Below are positions 1 through 64,000 of a stretch of 64,000 nucleotides of DNA, piece after piece. Under the pieces are notes generated by a model that was not told where the DNA came from, searched no databases, and saw only the letters and a program-made list of their open reading frames with translations. The first letter of the stretch is position 1. The number at the start of each line of letters is the position of its first letter. The DNA lies in IMG/VR virus record IMGVR_UViG_3300042465_005589, positions 1-64,000 of that record. One strand, 5' to 3'. The translations under genes were made by a program, and so were the position numbers.

Positions 1-2466
1 CGCTAGTTCCTGAAGTACCGCTTGTACCTGAAGTACCATCTGTACCGCTAGTTCCTGAAGTACCGCTTGTACCTGAAGTACCATCTGTACCGCTAGTTCC
101 TGAAGTACCGCTTGTTCCCGAAGTTCCCGAAGTTCCCGAAGTACCATCTGTACCGCTAGTTCCTGAAGTACCGCTTGTCCCTGAAGTTCCTGAAGTACCA
201 TCTGTACCGCTAGTTCCCGAAGTACCATCTGTACCGCTAGTTCCTGATGAACCACTTGTACCTGAGGTACCTGTAGTACCACTTGTTCCACTTGCTCCGT
301 TAACACCTGAAGAACCGCTAGTTCCTGATGTTCCACTTGTACCTCCGGTACCATTCGTTCCCGAAGTTCCTGATGTACCGCTAGTTCCTGAAGTTCCTGA
401 AGTTCCTGATGTACCGCTTGTTCCCGAAGTTCCACTTGTACCTCCGGTACCATTCGTTCCTGAAGTACCGCTTGTTCCTGATGTACCTGAAGTACCATCT
501 GTACCGCTAGTTCCCGAAGTACCATCTGTACCGCTAGTTCCTGAAGTACCATCTGTACCGCTAGTTCCCGAAGTACCATCTGTACCGCTAGTTCCTGAAG
601 TACCGCTTGTTCCCGAAGTTCCTGAAGTTCCACTTGTACCTCCGGTACCATTCGTTCCTGAAGTACCGCTAGTTCCTGAAGTACCGCTAGTTCCTGTTGT
701 TCCCGAAGTTCCCGAAGTTCCCGAAGTACCATCTGTACCGCTTGTTCCCGAAGTTCCTGAAGTTCCACTTGTACCTCCGGTACCATTCGTTCCTGAAGTA
801 CCGCTTGTTCCTGATGTACCTGAAGTACCATCTGTACCGCTAGTTCCCGAAGTACCATCTGTACCGCTAGTTCCTGAAGTACCATCTGTACCGCTAGTTC
901 CCGAAGTACCATCTGTACCGCTAGTTCCTGAAGTACCGCTTGTTCCCGAAGTTCCTGAAGTTCCACTTGTACCTCCGGTACCATTCGTTCCTGAAGTACC
1001 GCTAGTTCCTGAAGTACCGCTAGTTCCTGTTGTTCCCGAAGTTCCCGAAGTTCCCGAAGTACCATCTGTACCGCTAGTTCCTGAAGTACCATCTGTACCG
1101 CTAGTTCCTGAAGTACCGCTTGTACCTGAAGTACCATCTGTACCGCTTGTACCTGAAGTACCATCTGTACCGCTAGTTCCTGAAGTACCGCTTGTTCCTG
1201 ATGTACCATCTGTACCGCTAGTTCCCGAAGTACCATCTGTACCGCTAGTTCCTGAAGTACCGCTTGTCCCTGAAGTACCGCTTGTCCCTGAAGTTCCTGA
1301 AGTACCATCTGTACCGCTAGTTCCCGAAGTACCATCTGTACCGCTAGTTCCTGAAGTACCGCTTGTACCTGAAGTACCATCTGTACCGCTTGTTCCTGAT
1401 GTTCCATCTGTTCCACTAGTACCTGAAGTACCATCTGTACCCGAAGTTCCATCTGAACCTGAAGTTCCACTAGTACCTGAAGTTCCGTCTGTCCCGCTCG
1501 TTCCTGAAGTACCTGAAGTACCTGAAGTACCATCCGTACCACTTGTTCCTGAAGTACCATCTGTACCCGAAGTTCCATCTGAACCTGAAGTTCCACTAGT
1601 CCCTGAAGTTCCGTCAGTACCGCTAGTTCCCGAAGTACCATCTGTACCACTTGTACCTGAAGTTCCGTCTGTTCCGCTAGTTCCCGAAGTTCCGTCTGTT
1701 CCGCTAGTACCTGAAGTACCATCTGTTCCGCTAGTACCTGAAGTACCATCTGTTCCGCTAGTACCTGAAGTACCATCTGTTCCGCTAGTACCCGAAGTAC
1801 CATCCGTACCACTTGTTCCACTTGTACCGTCTGAACCTGATGTACCACTAGTACCTGAAGTTCCATTATTACCTGAAGTACCCGAAGTACCTGAAGTACC
1901 ATCTGTACCACTAGTTCCTGAAGTTCCATCTGTTCCGCTAGTTCCTGAAGTTCCATCTGAACCTGAAGTTCCTGAAGACCCGTTATTACCTGATGTACCG
2001 CTAGTACCCGAAGACCCGTTATTACCTGATGTTCCACTAGTACCTGAAGTTCCATTATTACCTGAAGTACCCGAAGTACCTGAAGTACCATCTGTACCAC
2101 TAGTTCCTGAAGTTCCATCTGTTCCGCTAGTTCCTGAAGTTCCATCTGAACCTGAAGTTCCTGAAGACCCGTTATTACCTGATGTACCGCTAGTACCCGA
2201 AGACCCGTTATTACCTGATGTTCCACTCGTTCCCGAAGTTCCATCTGTCCCACTAGTACCGGAAGTTCCATCAGAACCTGAAGTCCCTGAAGACCCATTA
2301 TTACCTGATGTTCCACTTGTTCCCGAAGAACCATTATTACCTGAAGTTCCGCTTGTACCTGAAGTTCCACTTGTACCCGAAGTTCCTGTTGTTCCATTTG
2401 AACCACTAGTTCCATCCACACCACTAGTACCTGATGTTCCGTCAATACCACTTGTACCTGAAGTAC
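1..2466 (-). repeat. 9-bp-unit coding tandem repeat (Gly-Thr-Ser) with higher-order block duplications
   Basis: units such as cctgaagta/ccgctagtt/ccatctgta; near-exact blocks at ~428 and ~761 (period 333) and at ~1851 and ~2040 (period 189). Confidence 0.95.
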
Positions 2467-2800
2467 CGGCTTGAGCAATTAAACCCCAATTAAAATTAGT
2501 ATCCGGAGCACCTCCACCAGCAGGAATTATTGTTGTTGCAAGATATGAACTACCATTATAATAAACAACATCCCCATCATCATAATTAATTGAAGGAGAC
2601 CAAGTACCTTTCCAAATGAAACTTTTTCCACTTGTACCTGATGTACCCGAAGTACCGGAACTAAATTGTGCGGTTAAGGCTGAATAATATATGTAATTTG
2701 TTTGTCCGGTAGGTACCAGGTCATAGTTTACTATAACTAAAAGAGATTCCGGAAATGCCGAAAACGCTTGAGGTAACTGTGAAATAGGTATATTTGCCAT
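1..2800 (-). CDS. collagen-like (Gly-X-Y) fibre protein, partial (runs off the left edge); missing from ORF track
   Basis: ATG at 2800: MANIPISQLPQAFSAFPESLLVIVNYDLVPTGQTNYIYYSALTAQ..., a short module (WKGTWSPSINYDDGDVVYYNGSSY), then continuous GTS/GTD/GNN/GSS triplets; no in-frame stop seen. Confidence 0.85.
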   Translation of the reverse strand, partial: MANIPISQLPQAFSAFPESLLVIVNYDLVPTGQTNYIYYSALTAQFSSGTSGTSGTSGKSFIWKGTWSPSINYDDGDVVYYNGSSYLATTIIPAGGGAPDTNFNWGLIAQAGTSGTSGIDGTSGTSGVDGTSGSNGTTGTSGTSGTSGTSGTSGNNGSSGTSGTSGNNGSSGTSGSDGTSGTSGTDGTSGTSGTSGNNGSSGTSGTSGNNGSSGTSGSDGTSGTSGTDGTSGTSGTDGTSGTSGTSGNNGTSGTSGTSGNNGSSGTSGTSGNNGSSGTSGSDGTSGTSGTDGTSGTSGTDGTSGTSGTSGNNGTSGTSGTSGSDGTSGTSGTDGTSGTSGTDGTSGTSGTDGTSGTSGTDGTSGTSGTDGTSGTSGTDGTSGTSGTDGTSGTSGTDGTSGTSGTSGSDGTSGTDGTSGTSGTDGTSGTSGTSGTSGTDGTSGTSGTSGSDGTSGTDGTSGTSGTDGTSGTSGTDGTSGTSGTSGTSGTDGTSGTSGTDGTSGTSGTSGTSGTSGTSGTSGTDGTSGTSGTDGTSGTSGTSGTSGTDGTSGTSGTDGTSGTSGTSGTSGTDGTSGTSGTDGTSGTSGTSGTTGTSGTSGTSGTSGTNGTGGTSGTSGTSGTSGTSGTSGTDGTSGTSGTDGTSGTSGTDGTSGTSGTDGTSGTSGTSGTSGTNGTGGTSGTSGTSGTSGTDGTSGTSGTSGTTGTSGTSGTSGTSGTNGTGGTSGTSGTSGTSGTSGTSGTDGTSGTSGTDGTSGTSGTDGTSGTSGTDGTSGTSGTSGTSGTNGTGGTSGTSGTSGTSGTSGTSGTSGTSGTSGTNGTGGTSGTSGTSGSSGVNGASGTSGTTGTSGTSGSSGTSGTDGTSGTSGTDGTSGTSGTSGTSGTSGTDGTSGTSGTSGTSGTSGTSGTDGTSGTSGTSGTSGTDGTSGTSGTSGTS

Positions 2801-56856: not shown

Positions 56857-58905
56857 ATGACAGAACCTATGGATGGTGGAAGTAACGGTGGAAATAATAA
56901 ATCAGTTAAGACTGATTCATCAACACCTGTATTAGACAATTTTAGTAGAGACCTTATTAAATTAGCCGAACAAGGAAAACTTGACCCGGTAATTGGTAGA
57001 GAAAGGGAAATCACTAGAATTGCTCAGATTCTTTCACGTAGAAAGAAAAATAACCCAATCATTATTGGTGAACCTGGTTGTGGTAAAACAGCAATCGTTG
57101 AAGGTCTTGCCATTATGATTTATAATGGGGAATGTCCAAGAAACTTAATGGACAAACGTATCGTATCATTAGATATGACATCAATTGTTGCCGGAACCAA
57201 ATATCGTGGACAATTTGAGGAAAGAATGAAAGTTATCATTGAAGAACTTCAAAACGAACCTAACATTATCGTATTCATTGACGAAATCCACACAATAGTT
57301 GGTGCAGGAAATTCATCAGGTTCAATGGATGCGTCTAACATCTTTAAACCAGCACTTGCTCGTGGTGAGATTCAATGTGTTGGAGCAACAACCTTAGACG
57401 AATATCGAAAAAACTTTGAGAAAGACGGAGCGTTAGAAAGACGTTTTCAAAAAGTTGTTGTGGATTCAGCAACCAAAGAAGAAACTTTGGAAATCCTTAA
57501 AAACGTAAAAGACAAATACGAGAACTTCCATAAGGTAACTTATACGGATGAAGTATTGTCTGTATGTGTTGATTTGGCTGACCGTTATATCACTGACAGA
57601 GAATTCCCGGATAAAGGTTTTGATATCATTGATGAAGTGGGAGCAAGAAGTCAAGTTGATATTAAGATGCCGGATTCAATTGAGAAATTGAAACAACAAG
57701 CGTCTGATATCAAACAAGAAAAGATTGATGTTGTAAAACAACAACGATATGAAGAAGCTGCGAACTTACGTGATAAAGAAAAACGTATCTTAACCAAACT
57801 TGAGACTGAAAAGAAAAAGTTTGAAGAAGAACTTCTTACTCACAAAAAAGAAATCACATTAGATTTAGTTTATGAGGTTGTGTCTAACATGACCAAAATT
57901 CCGGTAACCAAATTAAATGCTGATGAGACCAAACTATTATCTGAGATGGAGGCAAACCTATCTGATAAAGTTATTGGACAATCTGAAGCCGTTTCAAAGA
58001 TTGCTAAGTCAATCCGTAGAAACAGAATTGGTATTAAGGACCCGAACAAACCAATCGGTTCATTTATCTTCTTAGGTTCAACAGGTGTTGGTAAAACATA
58101 CTTGGCGAAACAACTAGCAAAACAAATGTTTGGTAGTGAAGATAATATGATTCGTGTGGATATGTCTGAATACCAAGAAAAACACACCATCTCAAGATTA
58201 ATTGGAGCACCTCCGGGATACGTTGGATACGATGAAGGGGGACAATTAACCGAACAAGTGAAAAACAAACCTTATTCTGTAATTCTATTTGATGAGATTG
58301 AGAAAGCTAACAAAGATATCTTCTCAACACTTCTTCAAGTATTAGACGACGGTCACCTTACCGATGGTATGGGGAGAAAGATTAACTTCAAAAATTGTGT
58401 CATCATTATGACCTCTAATGTTGGAGCTAAAAAATTACAAGATTTTGGTTCAGGAGTTGGTTTTAAAACCGGAACAAGCACTTATGCTGATGAAGAATAC
58501 AAACGTGATGTTCTTAAAAAAGAACTTAAGAAATTCTTCACACCGGAATTCTTAAACAGAATTGATGAGGTTGTTATCTTTAACACCCTAATTAAAGATG
58601 ATGTTAAGAAAATTGTGAAATTGGAATTAGACAAACTATCTAAAAGATTAGTTGGTTTGAAATACGATATTACATTTGATGATACCATTTTAGACCTAAT
58701 CTCTGAAGTTGGATTTGATGAGACCTACGGGGCTAGACCAATCAAAAGAGCAATCCAAGATAAAATTGAGGATTTTGTGTCCGAAGAAATTATCAAAGGA
58801 AATATGGTGGAGGGTGTTCCATACACCCTTATATCCGTAGAGAAAGAAGTGGTAGTTAAACCGGAAGTTGTTAAAAAGACAAGAAAGAAAAAAGAGGACA
58901 TATAG
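56857..58905 (+). CDS. clpC: ClpC-like AAA+ unfoldase lacking the N-terminal domain
   Basis: two AAA modules ([13 protein letters not shown]; [15 protein letters not shown]), UVR-like middle domain ([11 protein letters not shown]), ClpP-docking loop GVGF. Confidence 0.88.
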
Positions 58906-58919: not shown

Positions 58920-59741
58920 TTAAAATGATTTAAAATACTTACTGTCAACTTTAAACGGGTACTTTTTATATCCCAACCCCTCAATCATCTTTTTACCTGT
59001 CTCTATTCCACTATAAACATCTTCAACAACAACATACTCATTTGGGGTGTGATAGTTGTAATAACCTATCGCAAAATTGATACAGGAGAAATCAAAGATA
59101 TTCTTTAATGCGTAAACATCAGTATATGGATGTGATTGATAATCATGTCTCCCATTAAATCCTTCATTCAATGCAACATCACAAATATTAAAGAATTCAC
59201 CACCTCTTTCAAACAGTTGTGTCCCCATACAATATTCGCTTACCATAACATTTCCCGGAGCGTCAAACTGAATACCGTATCCAACATTTAAAAAGAAATT
59301 TGGGTCGGCTTTTTTGGACCCATGACATCCGGTTTCTTCTGATACAAAGAAAGCGGCTTTTAAATTTGGTAATTCTTTCAATAGTTCCAAACAAGCAAAA
59401 ACTCCACATTTATCGTCTCCCCCAATACCAGTTGGGTGTCCGAAATGATTATAAGCCTTTAACGATGGTTTAGGTATTTTTTGTTCATTTGGTAATATTT
59501 CCTCACGAATAATAATATTGTCTAAAGAGTGAACAGTATCTGTATGTGCAATAACACAAGGAAAGTAATCAATAAATTCGTCCGTTTGTTTAACAGCGTA
59601 AATATTTTTATGTTCGTCCACATTGAAGGGAATCCCATTTTGTTCTAACCAATTGATTAGAAATTCTACCATAAGGTCTTCTTGATAAGTTTTTGTCGGG
59701 ACCGACAAGACTTGTTTTAATAATTCATAATCTTTTTCCAT
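58920..59741 (-). CDS. M20/M28-clan zinc peptidase-like protein
   Basis: AHTDTV, GGDDKCG, EETGCHGS, YTD, YHTPNE. Confidence 0.8.
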   Translation of the reverse strand: MEKDYELLKQVLSVPTKTYQEDLMVEFLINWLEQNGIPFNVDEHKNIYAVKQTDEFIDYFPCVIAHTDTVHSLDNIIIREEILPNEQKIPKPSLKAYNHFGHPTGIGGDDKCGVFACLELLKELPNLKAAFFVSEETGCHGSKKADPNFFLNVGYGIQFDAPGNVMVSEYCMGTQLFERGGEFFNICDVALNEGFNGRHDYQSHPYTDVYALKNIFDFSCINFAIGYYNYHTPNEYVVVEDVYSGIETGKKMIEGLGYKKYPFKVDSKYFKSF

Positions 59742-59783: not shown

Positions 59784-61148
59784 TTAATTTATTCTAATAA
59801 ATCCTTCAAATAATTCAGGAGAAACTAAAAAATTATTAAATTCTTCTTCAGTGTAACTTCTATCTTCCATACCACCATCTTTTTTAAAAACTTGAACAAT
59901 TATTTTATTTGTTGCCGGGTCAATTTTTCTAATAAAAAACTCTCTACCTGATTTAGTTTTATATCTATTATTCATTTTATAATTTTGAGCAATTCGGTTA
60001 TATAATTCTGAATATCCATGAATATCGGCAAACTCATCAGAATCCTCTATTTTTTCAAATATTTTATCTAATTGTTTTTCAACGACATTATTATAATATA
60101 CCTCATCAAAGTCTTCACAATATATCTCCCATCTATTTTCGTCCCATCCACCAATATTACTATCTCTGTGTCCAATATCTTTAAGTAAATCATATAAACT
60201 TAATGTTTTATCCCCAACACTATTATATATTGATAATAATATACCTACTGTGGTATAATATTCTCTAAAACAATTTTGTCTAATTAATCCATAATTTGAA
60301 AAATAATCACAAACATCTCCTTCTATCCATTTTTCAGCCCCTTTATTTTTACAAGCATTTTCTTCATTAACCCAATCACTAAGTATATAATCGATTTCGT
60401 TCGGAAACATACTTTCAACCGTTTTTGATGCCGCCGATTTTACTTCATCATTTTCCAAATTAGCCACACCTGGACTAATAAGTTTTAGTATTTGTTTAAA
60501 TTTAATAAGATTTTCGTCGGAAAAAGAATGTATTAAATAACCTTCATCCCATTCATTCGATGCGTGGTCGTAATCAACAAAATCAAACATCCCATAATCA
60601 GAATAGACTGATTCCGCAAACGAAATATCGTATTCATCAAGTTCAAATAATTTTAAGTAATCTTCCATTTCATCAAAAGAAAGTTTAACCATACTTTTAT
60701 TTGGATTTTTTTCGTTATATATAAATTTCCAAATAAGACTATCAGCCCTTTCCATTTGATTAGTAGTCACTTTTTCACCGTTTTTAACCGCTAACAATAA
60801 TTTGTACACATCTGATTGTCCAACAATATTATCAATAACTGATTTAACCTCATCCGGTAAATCTGACTCAAATTCATGACGATTCATTTCTCTATGTCTA
60901 CGAACTTCACTACCATAATATTCTATTTTATTATCTTGTGTTTTATGAATAACTGATGTTTGGATTGGCTCCTTATCTTTATCTATAATAAAGTAAGTGT
61001 CCCCCTCTCTATACTTATTCCACTCAGATTTATAGTTTTCCGGAGCGTAATATACAAAGGAATCGTAATCCAATGGGTCTACGACCATCCAATCTTCATT
61101 ATCTAATAGTATGTTTTTTGTTCCGTTAAAGTCCTTCGTATCAGGCAT
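59784..61148 (-). CDS. hypothetical acidic protein
   Basis: 454 aa; late motif 61166-61172. Confidence 0.65.
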   Translation of the reverse strand: MPDTKDFNGTKNILLDNEDWMVVDPLDYDSFVYYAPENYKSEWNKYREGDTYFIIDKDKEPIQTSVIHKTQDNKIEYYGSEVRRHREMNRHEFESDLPDEVKSVIDNIVGQSDVYKLLLAVKNGEKVTTNQMERADSLIWKFIYNEKNPNKSMVKLSFDEMEDYLKLFELDEYDISFAESVYSDYGMFDFVDYDHASNEWDEGYLIHSFSDENLIKFKQILKLISPGVANLENDEVKSAASKTVESMFPNEIDYILSDWVNEENACKNKGAEKWIEGDVCDYFSNYGLIRQNCFREYYTTVGILLSIYNSVGDKTLSLYDLLKDIGHRDSNIGGWDENRWEIYCEDFDEVYYNNVVEKQLDKIFEKIEDSDEFADIHGYSELYNRIAQNYKMNNRYKTKSGREFFIRKIDPATNKIIVQVFKKDGGMEDRSYTEEEFNNFLVSPELFEGFIRIN

Positions 61149-61180
61149 TGATATTTATTTTAATAATAAATATAATTTTA

Positions 61181-61211
61181 TTTGGATTTATCCAAAAATG
61201 TATTATCTTTG
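61181..61211 (+). promoter_or_regulatory. Bacteroidota sigma-A promoter for tmRNA
   Basis: TTTG 61181-61184, 19-nt spacer, TATCTTTG 61204-61211. Confidence 0.7.
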
Positions 61212-61225
61212 TGGTATCAAAATAT

Positions 61226-61619
61226 GGGAGTGACACGGAATTGACTATTCGTAATAGTTATTCGGGGCACGTAGTGAGATGTTCTCTATCACTTAAATCT
61301 ATGGGTACAACAATTTAGACGGAAACGTTTTAAACAAAATGGCTCTAGTAGGTCTTGTACGTCAAGATGAGCTTGTGAACGTAGCGTAAGCAAACACACA
61401 TTGGGGTCGGTGGACATATAACCCAGCAACAGGAGTCCTTAAAAAGGTGTGGTACCTATCCGAAAAGGTACAAGTGGAGGATTAGTTCTCAGTAAACCGA
61501 ACCACTCTAAAAATAAGGGAATTGTGAAATTTTGGATTGTTAGCTTAAACAATATCCTAAACGTGTAGTCCTTAATAGGTAATACAAGTAACACCGGAGT
61601 TCGAGTCTCCGCACTTCCA
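61226..61619 (+). ncRNA. ssrA: tmRNA
   Basis: 5' GGGAGTG pairs with 3' CACTTCC (G3-U alanine determinant), discriminator A; GGAATTGAC D-loop analogue; T-arm CGGAG-TTCGAGT-CTCCG; tag ORF 61321-61389; smpB nearby; CCA not encoded. Confidence 0.93.
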
Positions 61620-61626
61620 CAAAAAG

Positions 61627-61654
61627 AAAAACCCATCATACGATGGGTTTTTTT
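61627..61654. terminator. bidirectional intrinsic terminator
   Basis: aaaacccatc-atac-gatgggttttttt. Confidence 0.85.
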
Positions 61655-62078: not shown

Positions 62079-62459
62079 TTATTGTTTAACTCCTCCCCAC
62101 AAATAACCATCACCATATGAAGTACATATTTCTTCACCGGGTTGGATTGTTTGTAAAGAGTAAAATTGAAATGCTCGTTTAGTTGGGTGATTTCTCCACA
62201 TTGCGTTATTAGTATCTGAATGATTATATATACATCCATACCCTAATGGTATCACATATTCAGTCCAATTTGGTCCTTGAGGATAACAAAATCTATAATC
62301 ATCAAGTAATCTTGATTGTTCCCATTTTTTTGTTGGTAAAGTCACTAAATGACATTCTTCAATCAACTCATCTTTTTCAATGACATCAATTGCAAATACC
62401 CCCATTCCTTTTCCTGGAGAGGGTTTAATCTCTATTTTGGTCGGTATTAATAAATTCAT
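62079..62459 (-). CDS. SET-domain protein (putative lysine methyltransferase)
   Basis: GKGMGVFA, YNHS, I.PGEEICTSYG. Confidence 0.88.
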   Translation of the reverse strand: MNLLIPTKIEIKPSPGKGMGVFAIDVIEKDELIEECHLVTLPTKKWEQSRLLDDYRFCYPQGPNWTEYVIPLGYGCIYNHSDTNNAMWRNHPTKRAFQFYSLQTIQPGEEICTSYGDGYLWGGVKQ

Positions 62460-62473
62460 AAGTAAATTATAAT

Positions 62474-62502
62474 AAAAAAAGAGACTATTTCAAGTCTCTT
62501 TT
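62474..62502 (-). terminator. intrinsic terminator after smpB
   Basis: aaaaaaagagact...agtctctttt. Confidence 0.7.
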
Positions 62503-62922
62503 CATATCTCTTTCAATGTCCCGAGATTTAATACTGTCTCGTTTATCGTATGTCTTCTTTCCTTTGGCAAGAGCAATCTCCATCTTAACTAACCCGGTAT
62601 CATTTATGAATACACGATAAGGAACGATGGTGGTTCCGTTGATTAGTTCGTTCTCCAATTTATTAAGTTCTTTTCGTTTAAGTAATAGTTTTCTATCCTT
62701 TACGGTCTCGTGAAAGGACCCGAACCCATAATCAGAGATATTCATTCCCTTTATAAACAACTCACCATTGTTGAAGTAACAAAACCCCTCAGATATGGAG
62801 ACCTTTCCCTGACGGATGGACTTTACCTCTGAACCAACTAGTTTGATTCCCACGATTAGTGTCTGTAGGAATGAATACTCAAACTTGGCTTTCTTATTGA
62901 CTATGTTAATTGATTTTTTCAT
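62485..62922 (-). CDS. smpB: SsrA-binding protein SmpB
   Basis: NKKAKFEY, GIKLVGSEVKSIR, RKLLL, ALAKGKKTYDKR. Confidence 0.96.
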   Translation of the reverse strand: MKKSINIVNKKAKFEYSFLQTLIVGIKLVGSEVKSIRQGKVSISEGFCYFNNGELFIKGMNISDYGFGSFHETVKDRKLLLKRKELNKLENELINGTTIVPYRVFINDTGLVKMEIALAKGKKTYDKRDSIKSRDIERDMKRDLK

Positions 62923-63794: not shown

Positions 63795-64000
63795 TTAATA
63801 CGATGAGAATACTCGTCTTATTGAGAATCTTCGGAAGGATTATTGTTTCCCTTCTTTTCCACCATCTTTTGAATGGTAATCCTCATTGCCGATTGGTTAG
63901 ACCAATCACTCCTTAAGATATCATTTACTCTCTCATTATTCAACTCTCTTTAACCTTGCGAGCTAACTCCGGATTCGACTCCGTAGAGGTTTTTGGCGAG
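63795..64000 (-). ncRNA. 3' part of a large structured RNA, possibly GOLLD-like (continues beyond window)
   Basis: GC-richer non-coding stretch with serial hairpins (63834-63854, 63861-63877, 63891-63907), CUCGCAAGG GNRA loop, two UUCUCA motifs, ends at a terminator; family assignment from memory only. Confidence 0.5.

What the first reader, a model, noticed from the sequence alone, without database searches (positions are those of the whole stretch)
61321..61389. Phage tmRNA encodes a long non-canonical tag ending in -VNVA
Seen: after UUUAGAC (compare E. coli AUAGUC before the resume codon) the frame reads GNVLNKMALVGLVRQDELVNVA-stop, 22 codons. Known: most tags are about 10 residues and end in ALAA/LAA, read by ClpX. 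Inference: the tag may avoid host ClpXP and so rescue ribosomes without destroying the product, or it may route products to the phage's own Clp ATPase.
Basis: partly seen in the sequence, partly recalled or inferred. Interest (0 to 1): 0.7.

Follow-up and report, generated by a model that had tools for sequence, protein, structure and literature searches.

The report
Phage tmRNA with long conserved tag
A 318-kb lake phage carries its own ribosome-rescue RNA (tmRNA) and partner protein SmpB, and the RNA encodes a 22-residue end-tag that is twice the usual length, differs from its likely host's tag, is conserved as a peptide across many related phages, and always sits beside a phage Clp unfoldase gene.

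Summary
Window 61226-61622 (+) is a full-length tmRNA (Rfam 65.7 bits, cut-off 47). The resume codon is GGA at 61321. The frame reads GNVLNKMALVGLVRQDELVNVA and stops at 61387-61389.

ARAGORN misses the window copy but calls the same resume site in relatives. Sixty-seven unique relatives from IMG/VR jumbo-phage contigs keep this frame open. Their 30 distinct tag DNAs differ mostly at third codon positions (55/26/121), so the peptide is under selection along its whole length.

The host is probably a Bacteroidota bacterium. Tags in that phylum are 9-10 residues long and end in -AA.

The phage also encodes SmpB, a ClpC-type unfoldase lacking the N-domain, and a ClpP. A block of ClpC, an M20-like peptidase, an unknown 454-aa gene and the tmRNA is conserved across the family. 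Freshwater metatranscriptomes cover the tmRNA far more deeply than its flanks.

Routing to the phage's own Clp machinery is plausible but untested.

Phage tmRNA plus SmpB is already published. The conserved long tag and its ClpC linkage appear new.

The parts
61181..61211 (+). Likely promoter of Bacteroidota type: TTTG (61181-61184), a 19-nt spacer, then TAtcTTTG (61204-61211), ending 15 nt before the mature 5' end
   Evidence: Read from the sequence. The TTTG...TAnnTTTG pair is kept upstream of the tmRNA in all relatives, including the most divergent. The sigma-70-like TTGATA/TATAAT at 61148-61176 is not kept in divergent relatives. TAnnTTTG is not enriched in the window as a whole, so the argument rests on positional conservation.
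61226..61622 (+). One-piece tmRNA gene (ssrA). The mature RNA probably ends at discriminator A61619 plus an added CCA
   Evidence: Rfam RF00023 at 65.7 bits, full length. It is the only tmRNA in the 318-kb genome. RNA-library contigs cover about 61235-61633 at depth 40-290, against 0-7 on the flanks.
61226..61232 (+). 5' strand of the acceptor stem (GGGAGUG). It pairs with 61612-61618 (CACUUCC) and holds the G3:U70 alanine identity pair
   Evidence: All 7 pairs form in 65-67 of 67 unique relatives. Pairs 4, 5 and 7 switch between G-C and A-U. G3:U70 is kept in 66 of 67.
61273..61309 (+). Pseudoknot PK1. Stem 1 is 61273-61277 with 61289-61293. Stem 2 is 61280-61286 with 61303-61309
   Evidence: Stem 1 pairs in 64-67 of 67 relatives and hardly varies. 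The inner three pairs of stem 2 covary (CG, UA, UG). Stem 2 is the stem annotated in the Rfam alignment.
61316..61320 (+). Resume-codon context UAGAC, with A at -4. It closes the 11-nt spacer (61310-61320) between PK1 and the resume codon
   Evidence: Aligned to the Rfam consensus UAAuU before GCa. A at -4 is invariant in the 27 unique relatives listed. Four host-phylum tmRNAs also have U-A at -5/-4 before a GGC resume codon.
61321..61389 (+). Tag reading frame: GGA resume codon, 22 codons (GNVLNKMALVGLVRQDELVNVA), TAA stop at 61387-61389
   Evidence: ARAGORN calls the homologous tags in relatives. There are 30 distinct tag DNAs. Changes at codon positions 1/2/3 are 55/26/121, and at least 84 of 202 are synonymous against 0.25 expected.
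61595..61611 (+). T-arm of the tRNA-like domain (stem CGGAG/CUCCG, loop UUCGAGU)
   Evidence: Rfam alignment. The five pairs form in 55-64 of 67 relatives, and several switch between pair types.
61627..61652 (.). Hairpin terminator with A- and T-runs on either side, shared by the tmRNA (+) and the 119-aa gene (-)
   Evidence: Terminator scan and sequence.
62485..62922 (-). smpB: SsrA-binding protein, 145 aa, full length with the basic C-terminal tail
   Evidence: Pfam SmpB 163.7 bits. NCBIfam equivalog 158.8 bits against a cut-off of 130. It aligns end to end with solved SmpBs. The closest cellular relatives are all Bacteroidota at 50-59% identity.
56857..58905 (+). ClpC-type double-AAA+ unfoldase without the N-terminal domain (682 aa)
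   Evidence: One-piece match to S. aureus ClpC residues 150-800 at 747 bits, with GVGF at the loop position. ClpB matches fall in two pieces. Pfam finds AAA, AAA_lid_9, AAA_2 and ClpB_D2-small but no Clp_N. It lies 2.3-6.1 kb from the tmRNA in all five complete genomes and is found wherever the flank allows in more than 70 loci.
58920..59741 (-). M20-like metallopeptidase (273 aa), part of the conserved block
   Evidence: PHROG 4191 'peptidase' at 124.5 bits. Weak Pfam M20/M42 hits. 68-100% identical across the family.
59784..61148 (-). Unknown 454-aa protein transcribed divergently from the tmRNA. It is always next to the tmRNA and evolves fast (26-100% identity)
   Evidence: No Pfam, PHROG or NCBIfam hit. 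The AF2 model is confident (pLDDT 87.8) but has no real structural match.

Best explanation
This is a working, phage-encoded one-piece tmRNA. Shown: it has every sequence and structure hallmark of the family. It sits 860 nt from a full-length phage smpB. RNA libraries from lakes hold it at far higher depth than its flanks. Its internal frame is under peptide-level purifying selection in a large family of jumbo phages. Inferred: host AlaRS charges it with alanine through the G3:U70 pair, after the host CCA-adding enzyme completes the 3' end, since the window encodes CAA rather than CCA. Together with phage SmpB it enters stalled ribosomes of a Bacteroidota host. Translation resumes at GGA 61321, so Ala plus GNVLNKMALVGLVRQDELVNVA is added to the nascent chain. 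Because the whole 21-22-residue peptide is conserved (G1, K6, G11-L12, R14, an acidic pair at 16-17, a V-x-[V/T/A]-A end), the tag is a specific recognition signal and not just a short C-terminal degron. The most likely reader is Clp-type proteolysis in which the phage's own N-domain-less ClpC and ClpP take part. The ClpC gene is inherited with the tmRNA, and the neighbouring M20-like peptidase may help recycle the peptides. I put the core (functional tmRNA, this tag, selection on the peptide) at about 0.9. I put the assignment of the phage ClpC-ClpP as a reader at about 0.35-0.45.
For: Identity comes from Rfam at 65.7 bits over the full model, covarying acceptor and T stems with G3:U70 in 66 of 67 relatives, and PK1 followed by an 11-nt spacer. 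The resume site is supported by the Rfam alignment, ARAGORN calls in relatives, an invariant A at -4 and Gly resume codons in host-phylum tmRNAs. Coding selection: the frame is open in all relatives and the other frames are closed. pN/pS is mostly 0.1-0.7. Codon-position changes are 55/26/121 with excess synonymous change, p about 1e-7. 22 distinct but alignable tags occur in the 67 unique tmRNAs (30 distinct tag DNAs). Partner genes are SmpB, dN-ClpC with a GVGF loop, and ClpP with Ser/His/Asp aligned, scoring 218 bits as ClpP against 58 as a head protease. All four relatives that are at least 96% complete carry all four components. The ClpC-M20-orf454-tmRNA block is conserved, while smpB can lie about 190 kb away. 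Expression is supported by metatranscriptome contigs confined to the tmRNA. Contrast with the host: 28 of 29 sampled tags in the phylum are 9-10 residues and end in -AA, and no similar tmRNA was found in 401 sampled genomes.
Against: Nothing here shows which protease reads the tag. Gene linkage among related phages is not independent evidence. Host genomes already have a full-length ClpC and ClpB (41 of 41), so the phage ClpC is not a unique reader by type. The ClpP gene lies about 72 kb from the tmRNA. Two family variants end in -VAA, and more distant phage tmRNAs have long tags with canonical -AYAA or -VAA ends. That fits host ClpXP-type recognition of the C-terminus. The RNA-run data are assembler contigs from mixed communities, not strand-specific reads of this phage. 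The window copy lacks an encoded CCA, and no class II CCA-adding enzyme (PF01743) was found in the phage.
Confidence: 0.5

Rival explanations
1. The RNA and tag are the same, but host proteases alone read the tag. Host ClpXP would recognise the small hydrophobic C-terminus. Lon, FtsH or a tail-specific protease would recognise the hydrophobic body. The neighbouring phage ClpC would serve other purposes such as disaggregation or takeover of proteostasis, and its linkage to the tmRNA would be inherited gene order.
For: The tag end is always [V/T/A]-A, and two variants end in -VAA. More distant phage tmRNAs with long tags end in -AYAA and -VAA. Altered tails such as -LVA on the E. coli tag remain in use as degradation tags (PMC9382460). 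Every sampled host-phylum genome has its own ClpC and ClpB.
Against: This does not explain why positions 1-17 are conserved as amino acids when host tags need only 9-10 residues. It also does not explain why the tmRNA stays with ClpC even where smpB has moved away.
Confidence: 0.33
2. The tag is not a degradation signal. The phage rescues stalled ribosomes but spares the products, or the appended peptide has another role such as membrane or partner targeting.
For: The tag lacks the canonical -[L/M]AA end of the host phylum. It is long and could form a helix with a hydrophobic face (read from the sequence only).
Against: Purifying selection on the peptide means it is recognised by something. 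A mere non-degron would be free to drift. The terminal Ala is invariant, and the preceding residues stay small or hydrophobic as in known degrons. The RNA is co-inherited with an unfoldase, a ClpP and a peptidase.
Confidence: 0.1
3. The RNA acts mainly as a decoy or competitor that shuts down host trans-translation. It would titrate host SmpB, AlaRS or ribosomes, as proposed for the TLD-only RNA of mycobacteriophage DS6A, and tagging would be incidental.
For: Hudson et al. 2014 (PMC4131195) note that a TLD-only phage RNA could inhibit tmRNA by titrating SmpB.
Against: Here the full tmRNA is kept, with PK1, an open tag frame under coding selection and a stop codon. The phage also brings its own full-length SmpB.
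Confidence: 0.04
4. The open frame is conserved for RNA-level reasons only (structure or processing) and is not translated, or the gene is decaying.
For: The 5' part of the frame (GGNAACRUUUUARAYAAR) is also well conserved as nucleotides in most relatives. ARAGORN does not recognise the window copy. The encoded CCA is mutated to CAA.
Against: Third-position bias and excess synonymous change. A divergent subfamily (L040) rewrites the 5' codons yet keeps frame and length. Identical copies occur in three independent metagenomes. Many relatives lack an encoded CCA altogether. RNA libraries hold the RNA at high depth.
Confidence: 0.03

Closest known systems
Chromosomal tmRNA (ssrA) of Bacteroidota, the likely host phylum
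   Same: One-piece architecture, G3:U70 acceptor stem, PK1, and U-A at -5/-4 before a glycine (GGN) resume codon. The tag begins G-N or G-E. The promoter is of the TTTG/TAnnTTTG type.
   Different: Host tags are 9-10 residues and end in -[L/M/Y]AA, for example GENNYALAA and GESNYAMAA. The phage tag is 21-22 residues and ends in V-x-[V/T/A]-A. No nucleotide-level relative was found in 401 sampled genomes. The Rfam score is much lower: 46-83 bits against 105-186.
tmRNA and SmpB genes reported in huge phages (Al-Shayeb et al. 2020, PMC7162821)
   Same: A jumbo phage from an environmental metagenome that carries tmRNA, SmpB and many tRNAs.
   Different: In the passages I read, that paper lists the genes and proposes ribosome rescue or sensing of host state, and I saw no analysis of tag peptides or of a ClpC linkage. 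It found tmRNAs with ARAGORN, which at default settings misses 25 of 27 unique members of this family.
tmRNAs of cultured phages: the mycobacteriophage Bxz1 group and Bacillus phage G (Hudson et al. 2014, PMC4131195)
   Same: Complete ssrA genes carried by large lytic phages.
   Different: Those phages infect other host phyla. In the passages I read, the paper reports ssrA in them and makes no mention of a phage smpB. I did not examine their tags. The present family pairs the RNA with smpB, dN-ClpC and ClpP.
Mesoplasma/Mycoplasma ssrA tag read by Lon (reviewed in PMC9382460)
   Same: A tag much longer than the E. coli one, with a non-canonical end, whose whole length matters because a protease other than ClpXP reads it. 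This is a precedent for a tag and its reader changing together.
   Different: There is no sequence similarity. Mycoplasmas lack active ClpXP, whereas here the host phylum has Clp ATPases and the phage adds its own. I looked for no Lon gene in the phage, and no phage Lon is implicated.

Membership tests
tmRNA (Rfam RF00023, one-piece type) | Covariance-model score at or above the curated gathering score over the full model | tested here: met
   65.7 bits against 47, model positions 1-374. Relatives score 45.6-83.4 bits, one just under the cut-off.
tmRNA (Rfam RF00023, one-piece type) | tRNA-like domain: a 7-bp acceptor stem joining the 5' and 3' ends, the G3:U70 alanine identity pair, and a T-arm | tested here: met
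   All pairs form and three acceptor pairs covary. G3:U70 is kept in 66 of 67 relatives. The T-arm covaries.
tmRNA (Rfam RF00023, one-piece type) | Pseudoknot PK1 just upstream of the tag frame, with a short single-stranded spacer holding A at -4 | tested here: met
   PK1 lies at 61273-61309, followed by an 11-nt spacer. A at -4 is invariant.
tmRNA (Rfam RF00023, one-piece type) | Internal frame without a start codon that ends in a stop codon and encodes a tag with a hydrophobic end | tested here: met
   22 codons plus TAA. The frame is open in all 67 relatives with a coding substitution pattern.
tmRNA (Rfam RF00023, one-piece type) | 3'-terminal CCA | tested here: inconclusive
   The window encodes A-CAA. 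Most relatives encode A-CCA and several encode neither. The mature end needs a CCA-adding enzyme, and none of class II was found in the phage. The contig data cannot show the mature end.
tmRNA (Rfam RF00023, one-piece type) | A cognate SmpB partner | tested here: met
   smpB lies at 62485-62922 (-) and passes the NCBIfam equivalog cut-off. It is present in all five relatives examined.
tmRNA (Rfam RF00023, one-piece type) | Alanylation and trans-translation activity on ribosomes | not testable with these tools
   This needs biochemistry or mass spectrometry. Presence of the RNA in metatranscriptomes shows only that it accumulates.
Canonical ClpX-type ssrA degron (about 10 residues ending in -[L/M/V]AA) | Length of about 8-12 residues | tested here: not met
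   21-22 codons in all members of the family.
Canonical ClpX-type ssrA degron (about 10 residues ending in -[L/M/V]AA) | C-terminal Ala-Ala preceded by a hydrophobic residue | tested here: not met
   The window tag ends in N-V-A. The family ends in [V/T/A]-A, and only 2 of the 22 distinct tags end in -VAA. Recognition by ClpX itself was not testable.
ClpC subfamily of Hsp100/Clp ATPases (for the neighbouring 682-aa gene) | Two AAA+ modules, a short ClpC-type middle domain, and a ClpP-docking loop | tested here: met
   One-piece alignment to S. aureus ClpC 150-800 at 747 bits, while ClpB aligns in two pieces. GVGF sits at the loop position. Walker A/B motifs and pore-loop motifs are visible in the aligned sequence.
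ClpC subfamily of Hsp100/Clp ATPases (for the neighbouring 682-aa gene) | N-terminal Clp_N repeat domain, the adaptor and phospho-arginine docking site | tested here: not met
   The protein starts at the position equivalent to ClpC residue ~150 and has no Clp_N hit. Host homologues are 840-880 aa. It is therefore a truncated ClpC-like protein, not a standard ClpC.
ClpP serine peptidase (genome 133846-134580, outside the window) | ClpP fold with the Ser-His-Asp triad, as distinct from ClpP-related prohead proteases | tested here: met
   Pfam 177.6 bits. The triad aligns with H. pylori ClpP. NCBIfam gives ClpP 218 bits against 58 for the head-maturation type. Both are below the equivalog cut-offs.

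The most novel reading that the evidence does not exclude
These phages run a private branch of trans-translation. Their tmRNA-SmpB pair marks stalled products with a phage-specific 22-residue tag. That tag is read selectively by the phage's adaptor-independent, N-domain-less ClpC together with the phage ClpP. The fast-evolving 454-aa neighbour might help as an adaptor, and the M20-like peptidase might finish the breakdown. The phage would then both free host ribosomes and harvest amino acids without competing with, or depending on, the host's ClpXP pathway.
Probability: 0.25. Interest if true: 0.8.

Novelty: new variant of a known kind. Interest (0 to 1): 0.6.

Why it matters
Why phages carry tmRNA has been an open question since the first phage ssrA genes were seen. 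Here the question becomes testable. There is a large natural family with a defined, conserved, non-host tag, plus a complete set of candidate partners: SmpB, a truncated ClpC, ClpP and a peptidase.

If the tag is read by the phage's own Clp machine, this would be a virus-encoded orthogonal degradation pathway. It would be a second natural example, after the Mycoplasma Lon switch, of a tag and its protease changing together. It would also be a source of orthogonal degrons for synthetic biology.

There is a practical point as well. ARAGORN at default settings misses almost the whole family, and Rfam scores sit near the cut-off. Surveys of translation genes in huge phages have therefore probably under-counted tmRNAs.

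Tried and rejected
- **ARAGORN on the window and on an 800-nt excerpt.** It found nothing, down to -ps70.
- **blastn (distant mode) against 50,697 deposited phage genomes.** No match.
- **Rfam scan of 17 loci around more distant SmpB hits from viral contigs (34-63% identity).** No tmRNA of this family within 4 kb of smpB. Only L084 and L085 held a tmRNA, and those scored 168 bits, like cellular ones.
- **TAnnTTTG as a genome-wide host marker.** The motif is not enriched in the window (105 found against 112 expected). Only its conserved position upstream of the tmRNA is used as evidence.
- **The sigma-70-like promoter at 61148-61176.** It is not conserved in divergent relatives.
- **The 454-aa neighbour as a known adaptor.**
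  - It has no family hits.
  - Atlas feature scores were at most 0.83, which is noise level. A MecA cluster at rank 45 was a lead only.
  - A confident AF2 model found no real match in the PDB or in AlphaFold DB clusters.
- **Similarity of the tag to any phage ORF or to ORF C-termini.** None found.
- **A class II CCA-adding enzyme in the phage.** None found.
- **ClpC in the records of the other long-tag tmRNAs (L281, L291).** Those records are 2-6% fragments, so the result is uninformative.
- **Canonical initiation at the in-frame AUG (61339).** Rejected, because that codon encodes Leu instead of Met in 9 of 30 tag variants.
- **Complex prediction.** Not run. Tag recognition by an AAA+ unfoldase needs the hexamer pore, which exceeds the size limit. 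I make no claim that the 454-aa protein binds the tag.

Full report
**What the window is**

The window is the first 64 kb of a 318,164-bp IMG/VR virus record that CheckV rates as complete. It is a tailed phage. The window holds a major head protein, a portal and a large terminase. The genome has 23 tRNA genes, none for alanine. G+C is about 30%.

**Checking the observation**

- Rfam's tmRNA model matches 61226-61622 on the + strand over its whole length. The score is 65.7 bits against a cut-off of 47, with E 2e-23.
- It is the only tmRNA in the genome.
- The 5' end GGGAGUG pairs with CACUUCC at 61612-61618. That gives the G3:U70 pair that marks alanine acceptors. A T-arm follows the usual pattern.
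- The Rfam alignment puts the consensus UAAuU-GCa on UAGAC-GGA. The resume codon is therefore GGA at 61321.
- ARAGORN does not find the gene, even at relaxed thresholds.

**Relatives**

I searched IMG/VR with the neighbouring SmpB protein and found 79 loci. Thirty-six of them carry a homologous tmRNA next to smpB. A scan with a conserved 3' motif added 119 more stretches. Together these give 67 unique full-length tmRNAs.

Across them the structure behaves as expected for a real tmRNA:
- Acceptor pairs 4, 5 and 7 switch between G-C and A-U.
- G3:U70 is kept in 66 of 67.
- The T-arm covaries.
- Stem 1 of pseudoknot PK1 is nearly invariant.
- The inner pairs of PK1 stem 2 covary.

PK1 ends at 61309. 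An 11-nt spacer with an invariant A at -4 leads to the resume codon.

ARAGORN does recognise some relatives and calls the same resume site. At default settings it reports GNILDKMSAIGLIRAEEVVVA and GNVLDKMETLGLVRESEVTVA. At -ps80 it reports GNILNKMALVGLVRQDELVNVA in five more.

**Is the frame translated?**

- In every relative the frame from GGN is open for 21-22 codons. The other two frames are full of stops.
- There are 30 distinct tag DNAs encoding 22 distinct but alignable peptides.
- Along a minimum spanning tree of the tag DNAs, changes fall 55/26/121 on codon positions 1/2/3. At least 84 of 202 are synonymous, against 0.25 expected (p about 1e-7).
- Pairwise pN/pS is mostly 0.1-0.7, with synonymous sites near saturation.
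- G1, G11 and the terminal A are invariant. K6, L12, R14 and V19 are nearly so. Positions 16-17 are acidic, and the last four residues read V-x-[V/T/A]-A.
- A divergent subfamily (GETIAKLSAVGLIRSEEVVTA) rewrites the first codons but keeps frame and length.

So the peptide is under selection along its whole length, not only at its end. In-frame later resume points cannot be excluded by sequence. They would not change the C-terminal 15-17 residues.

**Host and contrast with the host tag**

- The nearest cellular SmpBs are all from Bacteroidota, at 50-59% identity.
- A TTTG, about 19 nt, TAnnTTTG element lies upstream of the tmRNA in all relatives, including the most divergent. By established knowledge this is the promoter type of that phylum. 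The motif is not enriched in the window as a whole, so only its conserved position counts.
- Host-phylum tmRNAs also resume at a glycine codon after U-A at -5/-4.
- Their tags are short. Four genomes with the closest SmpBs give GENNYALAA, GESNFALAA and GESNYAMAA. In a sample of 29 further genomes, 28 tags are 9-10 residues and end in -AA.
- No tmRNA like the phage's was found in 401 sampled genomes of the phylum.

**Partner genes**

- smpB (62485-62922, minus strand) is full length with its basic tail. It passes the NCBIfam equivalog cut-off.
- The 682-aa gene at 56857-58905 aligns in one piece with S. aureus ClpC residues 150-800 at 747 bits. It has GVGF at the ClpP-docking loop position and lacks the N-terminal domain.
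- Host-phylum genomes carry a full-length homologue of 840-880 aa at 53-59% identity, plus ClpB.
- A ClpP with the Ser-His-Asp triad lies at genome position 133846-134580. It scores far better as ClpP than as a head-maturation protease.
- All four relatives that are at least 96% complete carry tmRNA, SmpB, the truncated ClpC and ClpP.

Across more than 70 loci one block is kept whenever the flank is long enough: ClpC, an M20-like peptidase, a 454-aa unknown and the tmRNA. smpB is adjacent only in a subset, and in one genome it lies about 190 kb away. The 454-aa protein has a confident predicted structure but no known relative by sequence or fold.

**Expression**

At least 18 lake-water metagenomes hold the phage locus. 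In three freshwater metatranscriptomes, assembled contigs lie almost only on about 61235-61633. Their word depth is 40-290, against 0-7 on the flanking genes. This fits a stable, abundant RNA. These are contigs from mixed communities, however, so the ends and the CCA cannot be read.

The window copy encodes CAA where most relatives have CCA, and some relatives encode neither. Identical copies occur in three other metagenome contigs. No class II CCA-adding enzyme was found in the phage, so the host enzyme is presumably used.

**Interpretation**

The gene is a working phage tmRNA. Its tag is a specific, conserved recognition signal about twice as long as the host's.

Two variants end in -VAA. 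Changed tails such as -LVA on the E. coli tag are still used as degradation tags (PMC9382460).

Routing to the phage's own Clp machine fits the conserved gene linkage and the truncated, presumably adaptor-independent ClpC. It remains an inference. Host ClpXP, host ClpC, Lon or FtsH could read the tag instead or as well.

More distant phage tmRNAs also have long tags, with canonical ends: GKKSVWDVINAFGTPVAEVELAYAA and AKNVIAYDFTPEGVEVEVAA. Length as such may therefore be a wider trait of these phages.

**Comparison with what is known**

- Phage ssrA genes have been listed for the Bxz1 group of mycobacteriophages and for Bacillus phage G (PMC4131195).
- tmRNA plus SmpB has been reported in huge phages (PMC7162821).
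- That survey used ARAGORN, which at default settings misses 25 of 27 unique members of this family.
- In the papers I could search, I found no analysis of phage tag peptides or of a link to ClpC.
- The closest functional precedent is the long Mesoplasma tag read by Lon (PMC9382460).

I therefore class this as a new variant of a known kind, of moderate to high interest.

Noticed in passing
window 63800-64000 (-), continuing to genome position 64207: A full-length GOLLD RNA (RF02032, 306 bits). It lies between an HNH endonuclease gene and the phage's array of 23 tRNA genes (65.1-88.0 kb, minus strand). The window holds only its 3' half.
   Followed up: partly
window 2-2800 (-): A collagen-like protein of more than 933 residues, made of G-T-S / G-T-D triplets (27-nt period, about 80 copies). 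It runs off the start of the record. G+C is 0.42 against 0.30 elsewhere, and three overlapping long ORFs appear for that reason. It is probably a fibre protein.
   Followed up: partly
L007-L045 and L190-L308, tmRNA loci (alignment): The tmRNA looks mosaic among relatives. The tRNA-like domain type, the tag type and the PK2-PK4 region type assort independently. For example, L028 has a different tRNA-like domain but a tag DNA nearly identical to the window's (two changes in the first three codons). L018 has the window's tRNA-like domain but another tag. L017 and L010 have a longer 3' pseudoknot region. This suggests recombination within the gene.
   Followed up: no
window 61226-61622 and relatives: ARAGORN at default settings detects only 2 of 27 unique family members. 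Rfam scores (45.6-83 bits) straddle the gathering score of 47. Surveys that rely on ARAGORN have probably under-counted tmRNAs in huge phages.
   Followed up: yes
window 62079-62459 (-): A SET-domain protein (Pfam 49.5 bits) lies between the tmRNA and smpB. It is present only in the closest relatives.
   Followed up: no
window 58920-59741 (-): An M20-like metallopeptidase (PHROG 4191 'peptidase', 124.5 bits). It is conserved at 68-100% identity between the ClpC gene and the tmRNA across the family. It may belong to a proteolysis module.
   Followed up: partly
window 59784-61148 (-): A 454-aa protein transcribed divergently from the tmRNA. It is always adjacent and evolves fast (26-100% identity). 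The AF2 model is confident (pLDDT 87.8), but Foldseek against the PDB and AlphaFold DB clusters finds no structural match. The fold may be new.
   Followed up: yes
L177 (G010:C1:36616-36996) and L281/L291: More distant phage tmRNAs also encode long tags of 25 and 20 residues, but with canonical ends (-LAYAA and -EVAA).
   Followed up: partly
whole genome G000: None of the phage ORFs of at least 100 aa ends in -VA or -AA. The numbers are too small to be significant.
   Followed up: no
G009:C1:213156-213662 (L184): One relative carries an extra fragment of the ClpC C-terminal part (80% identity, one internal TAA) between its intact ClpC gene and the tmRNA.
   Followed up: no
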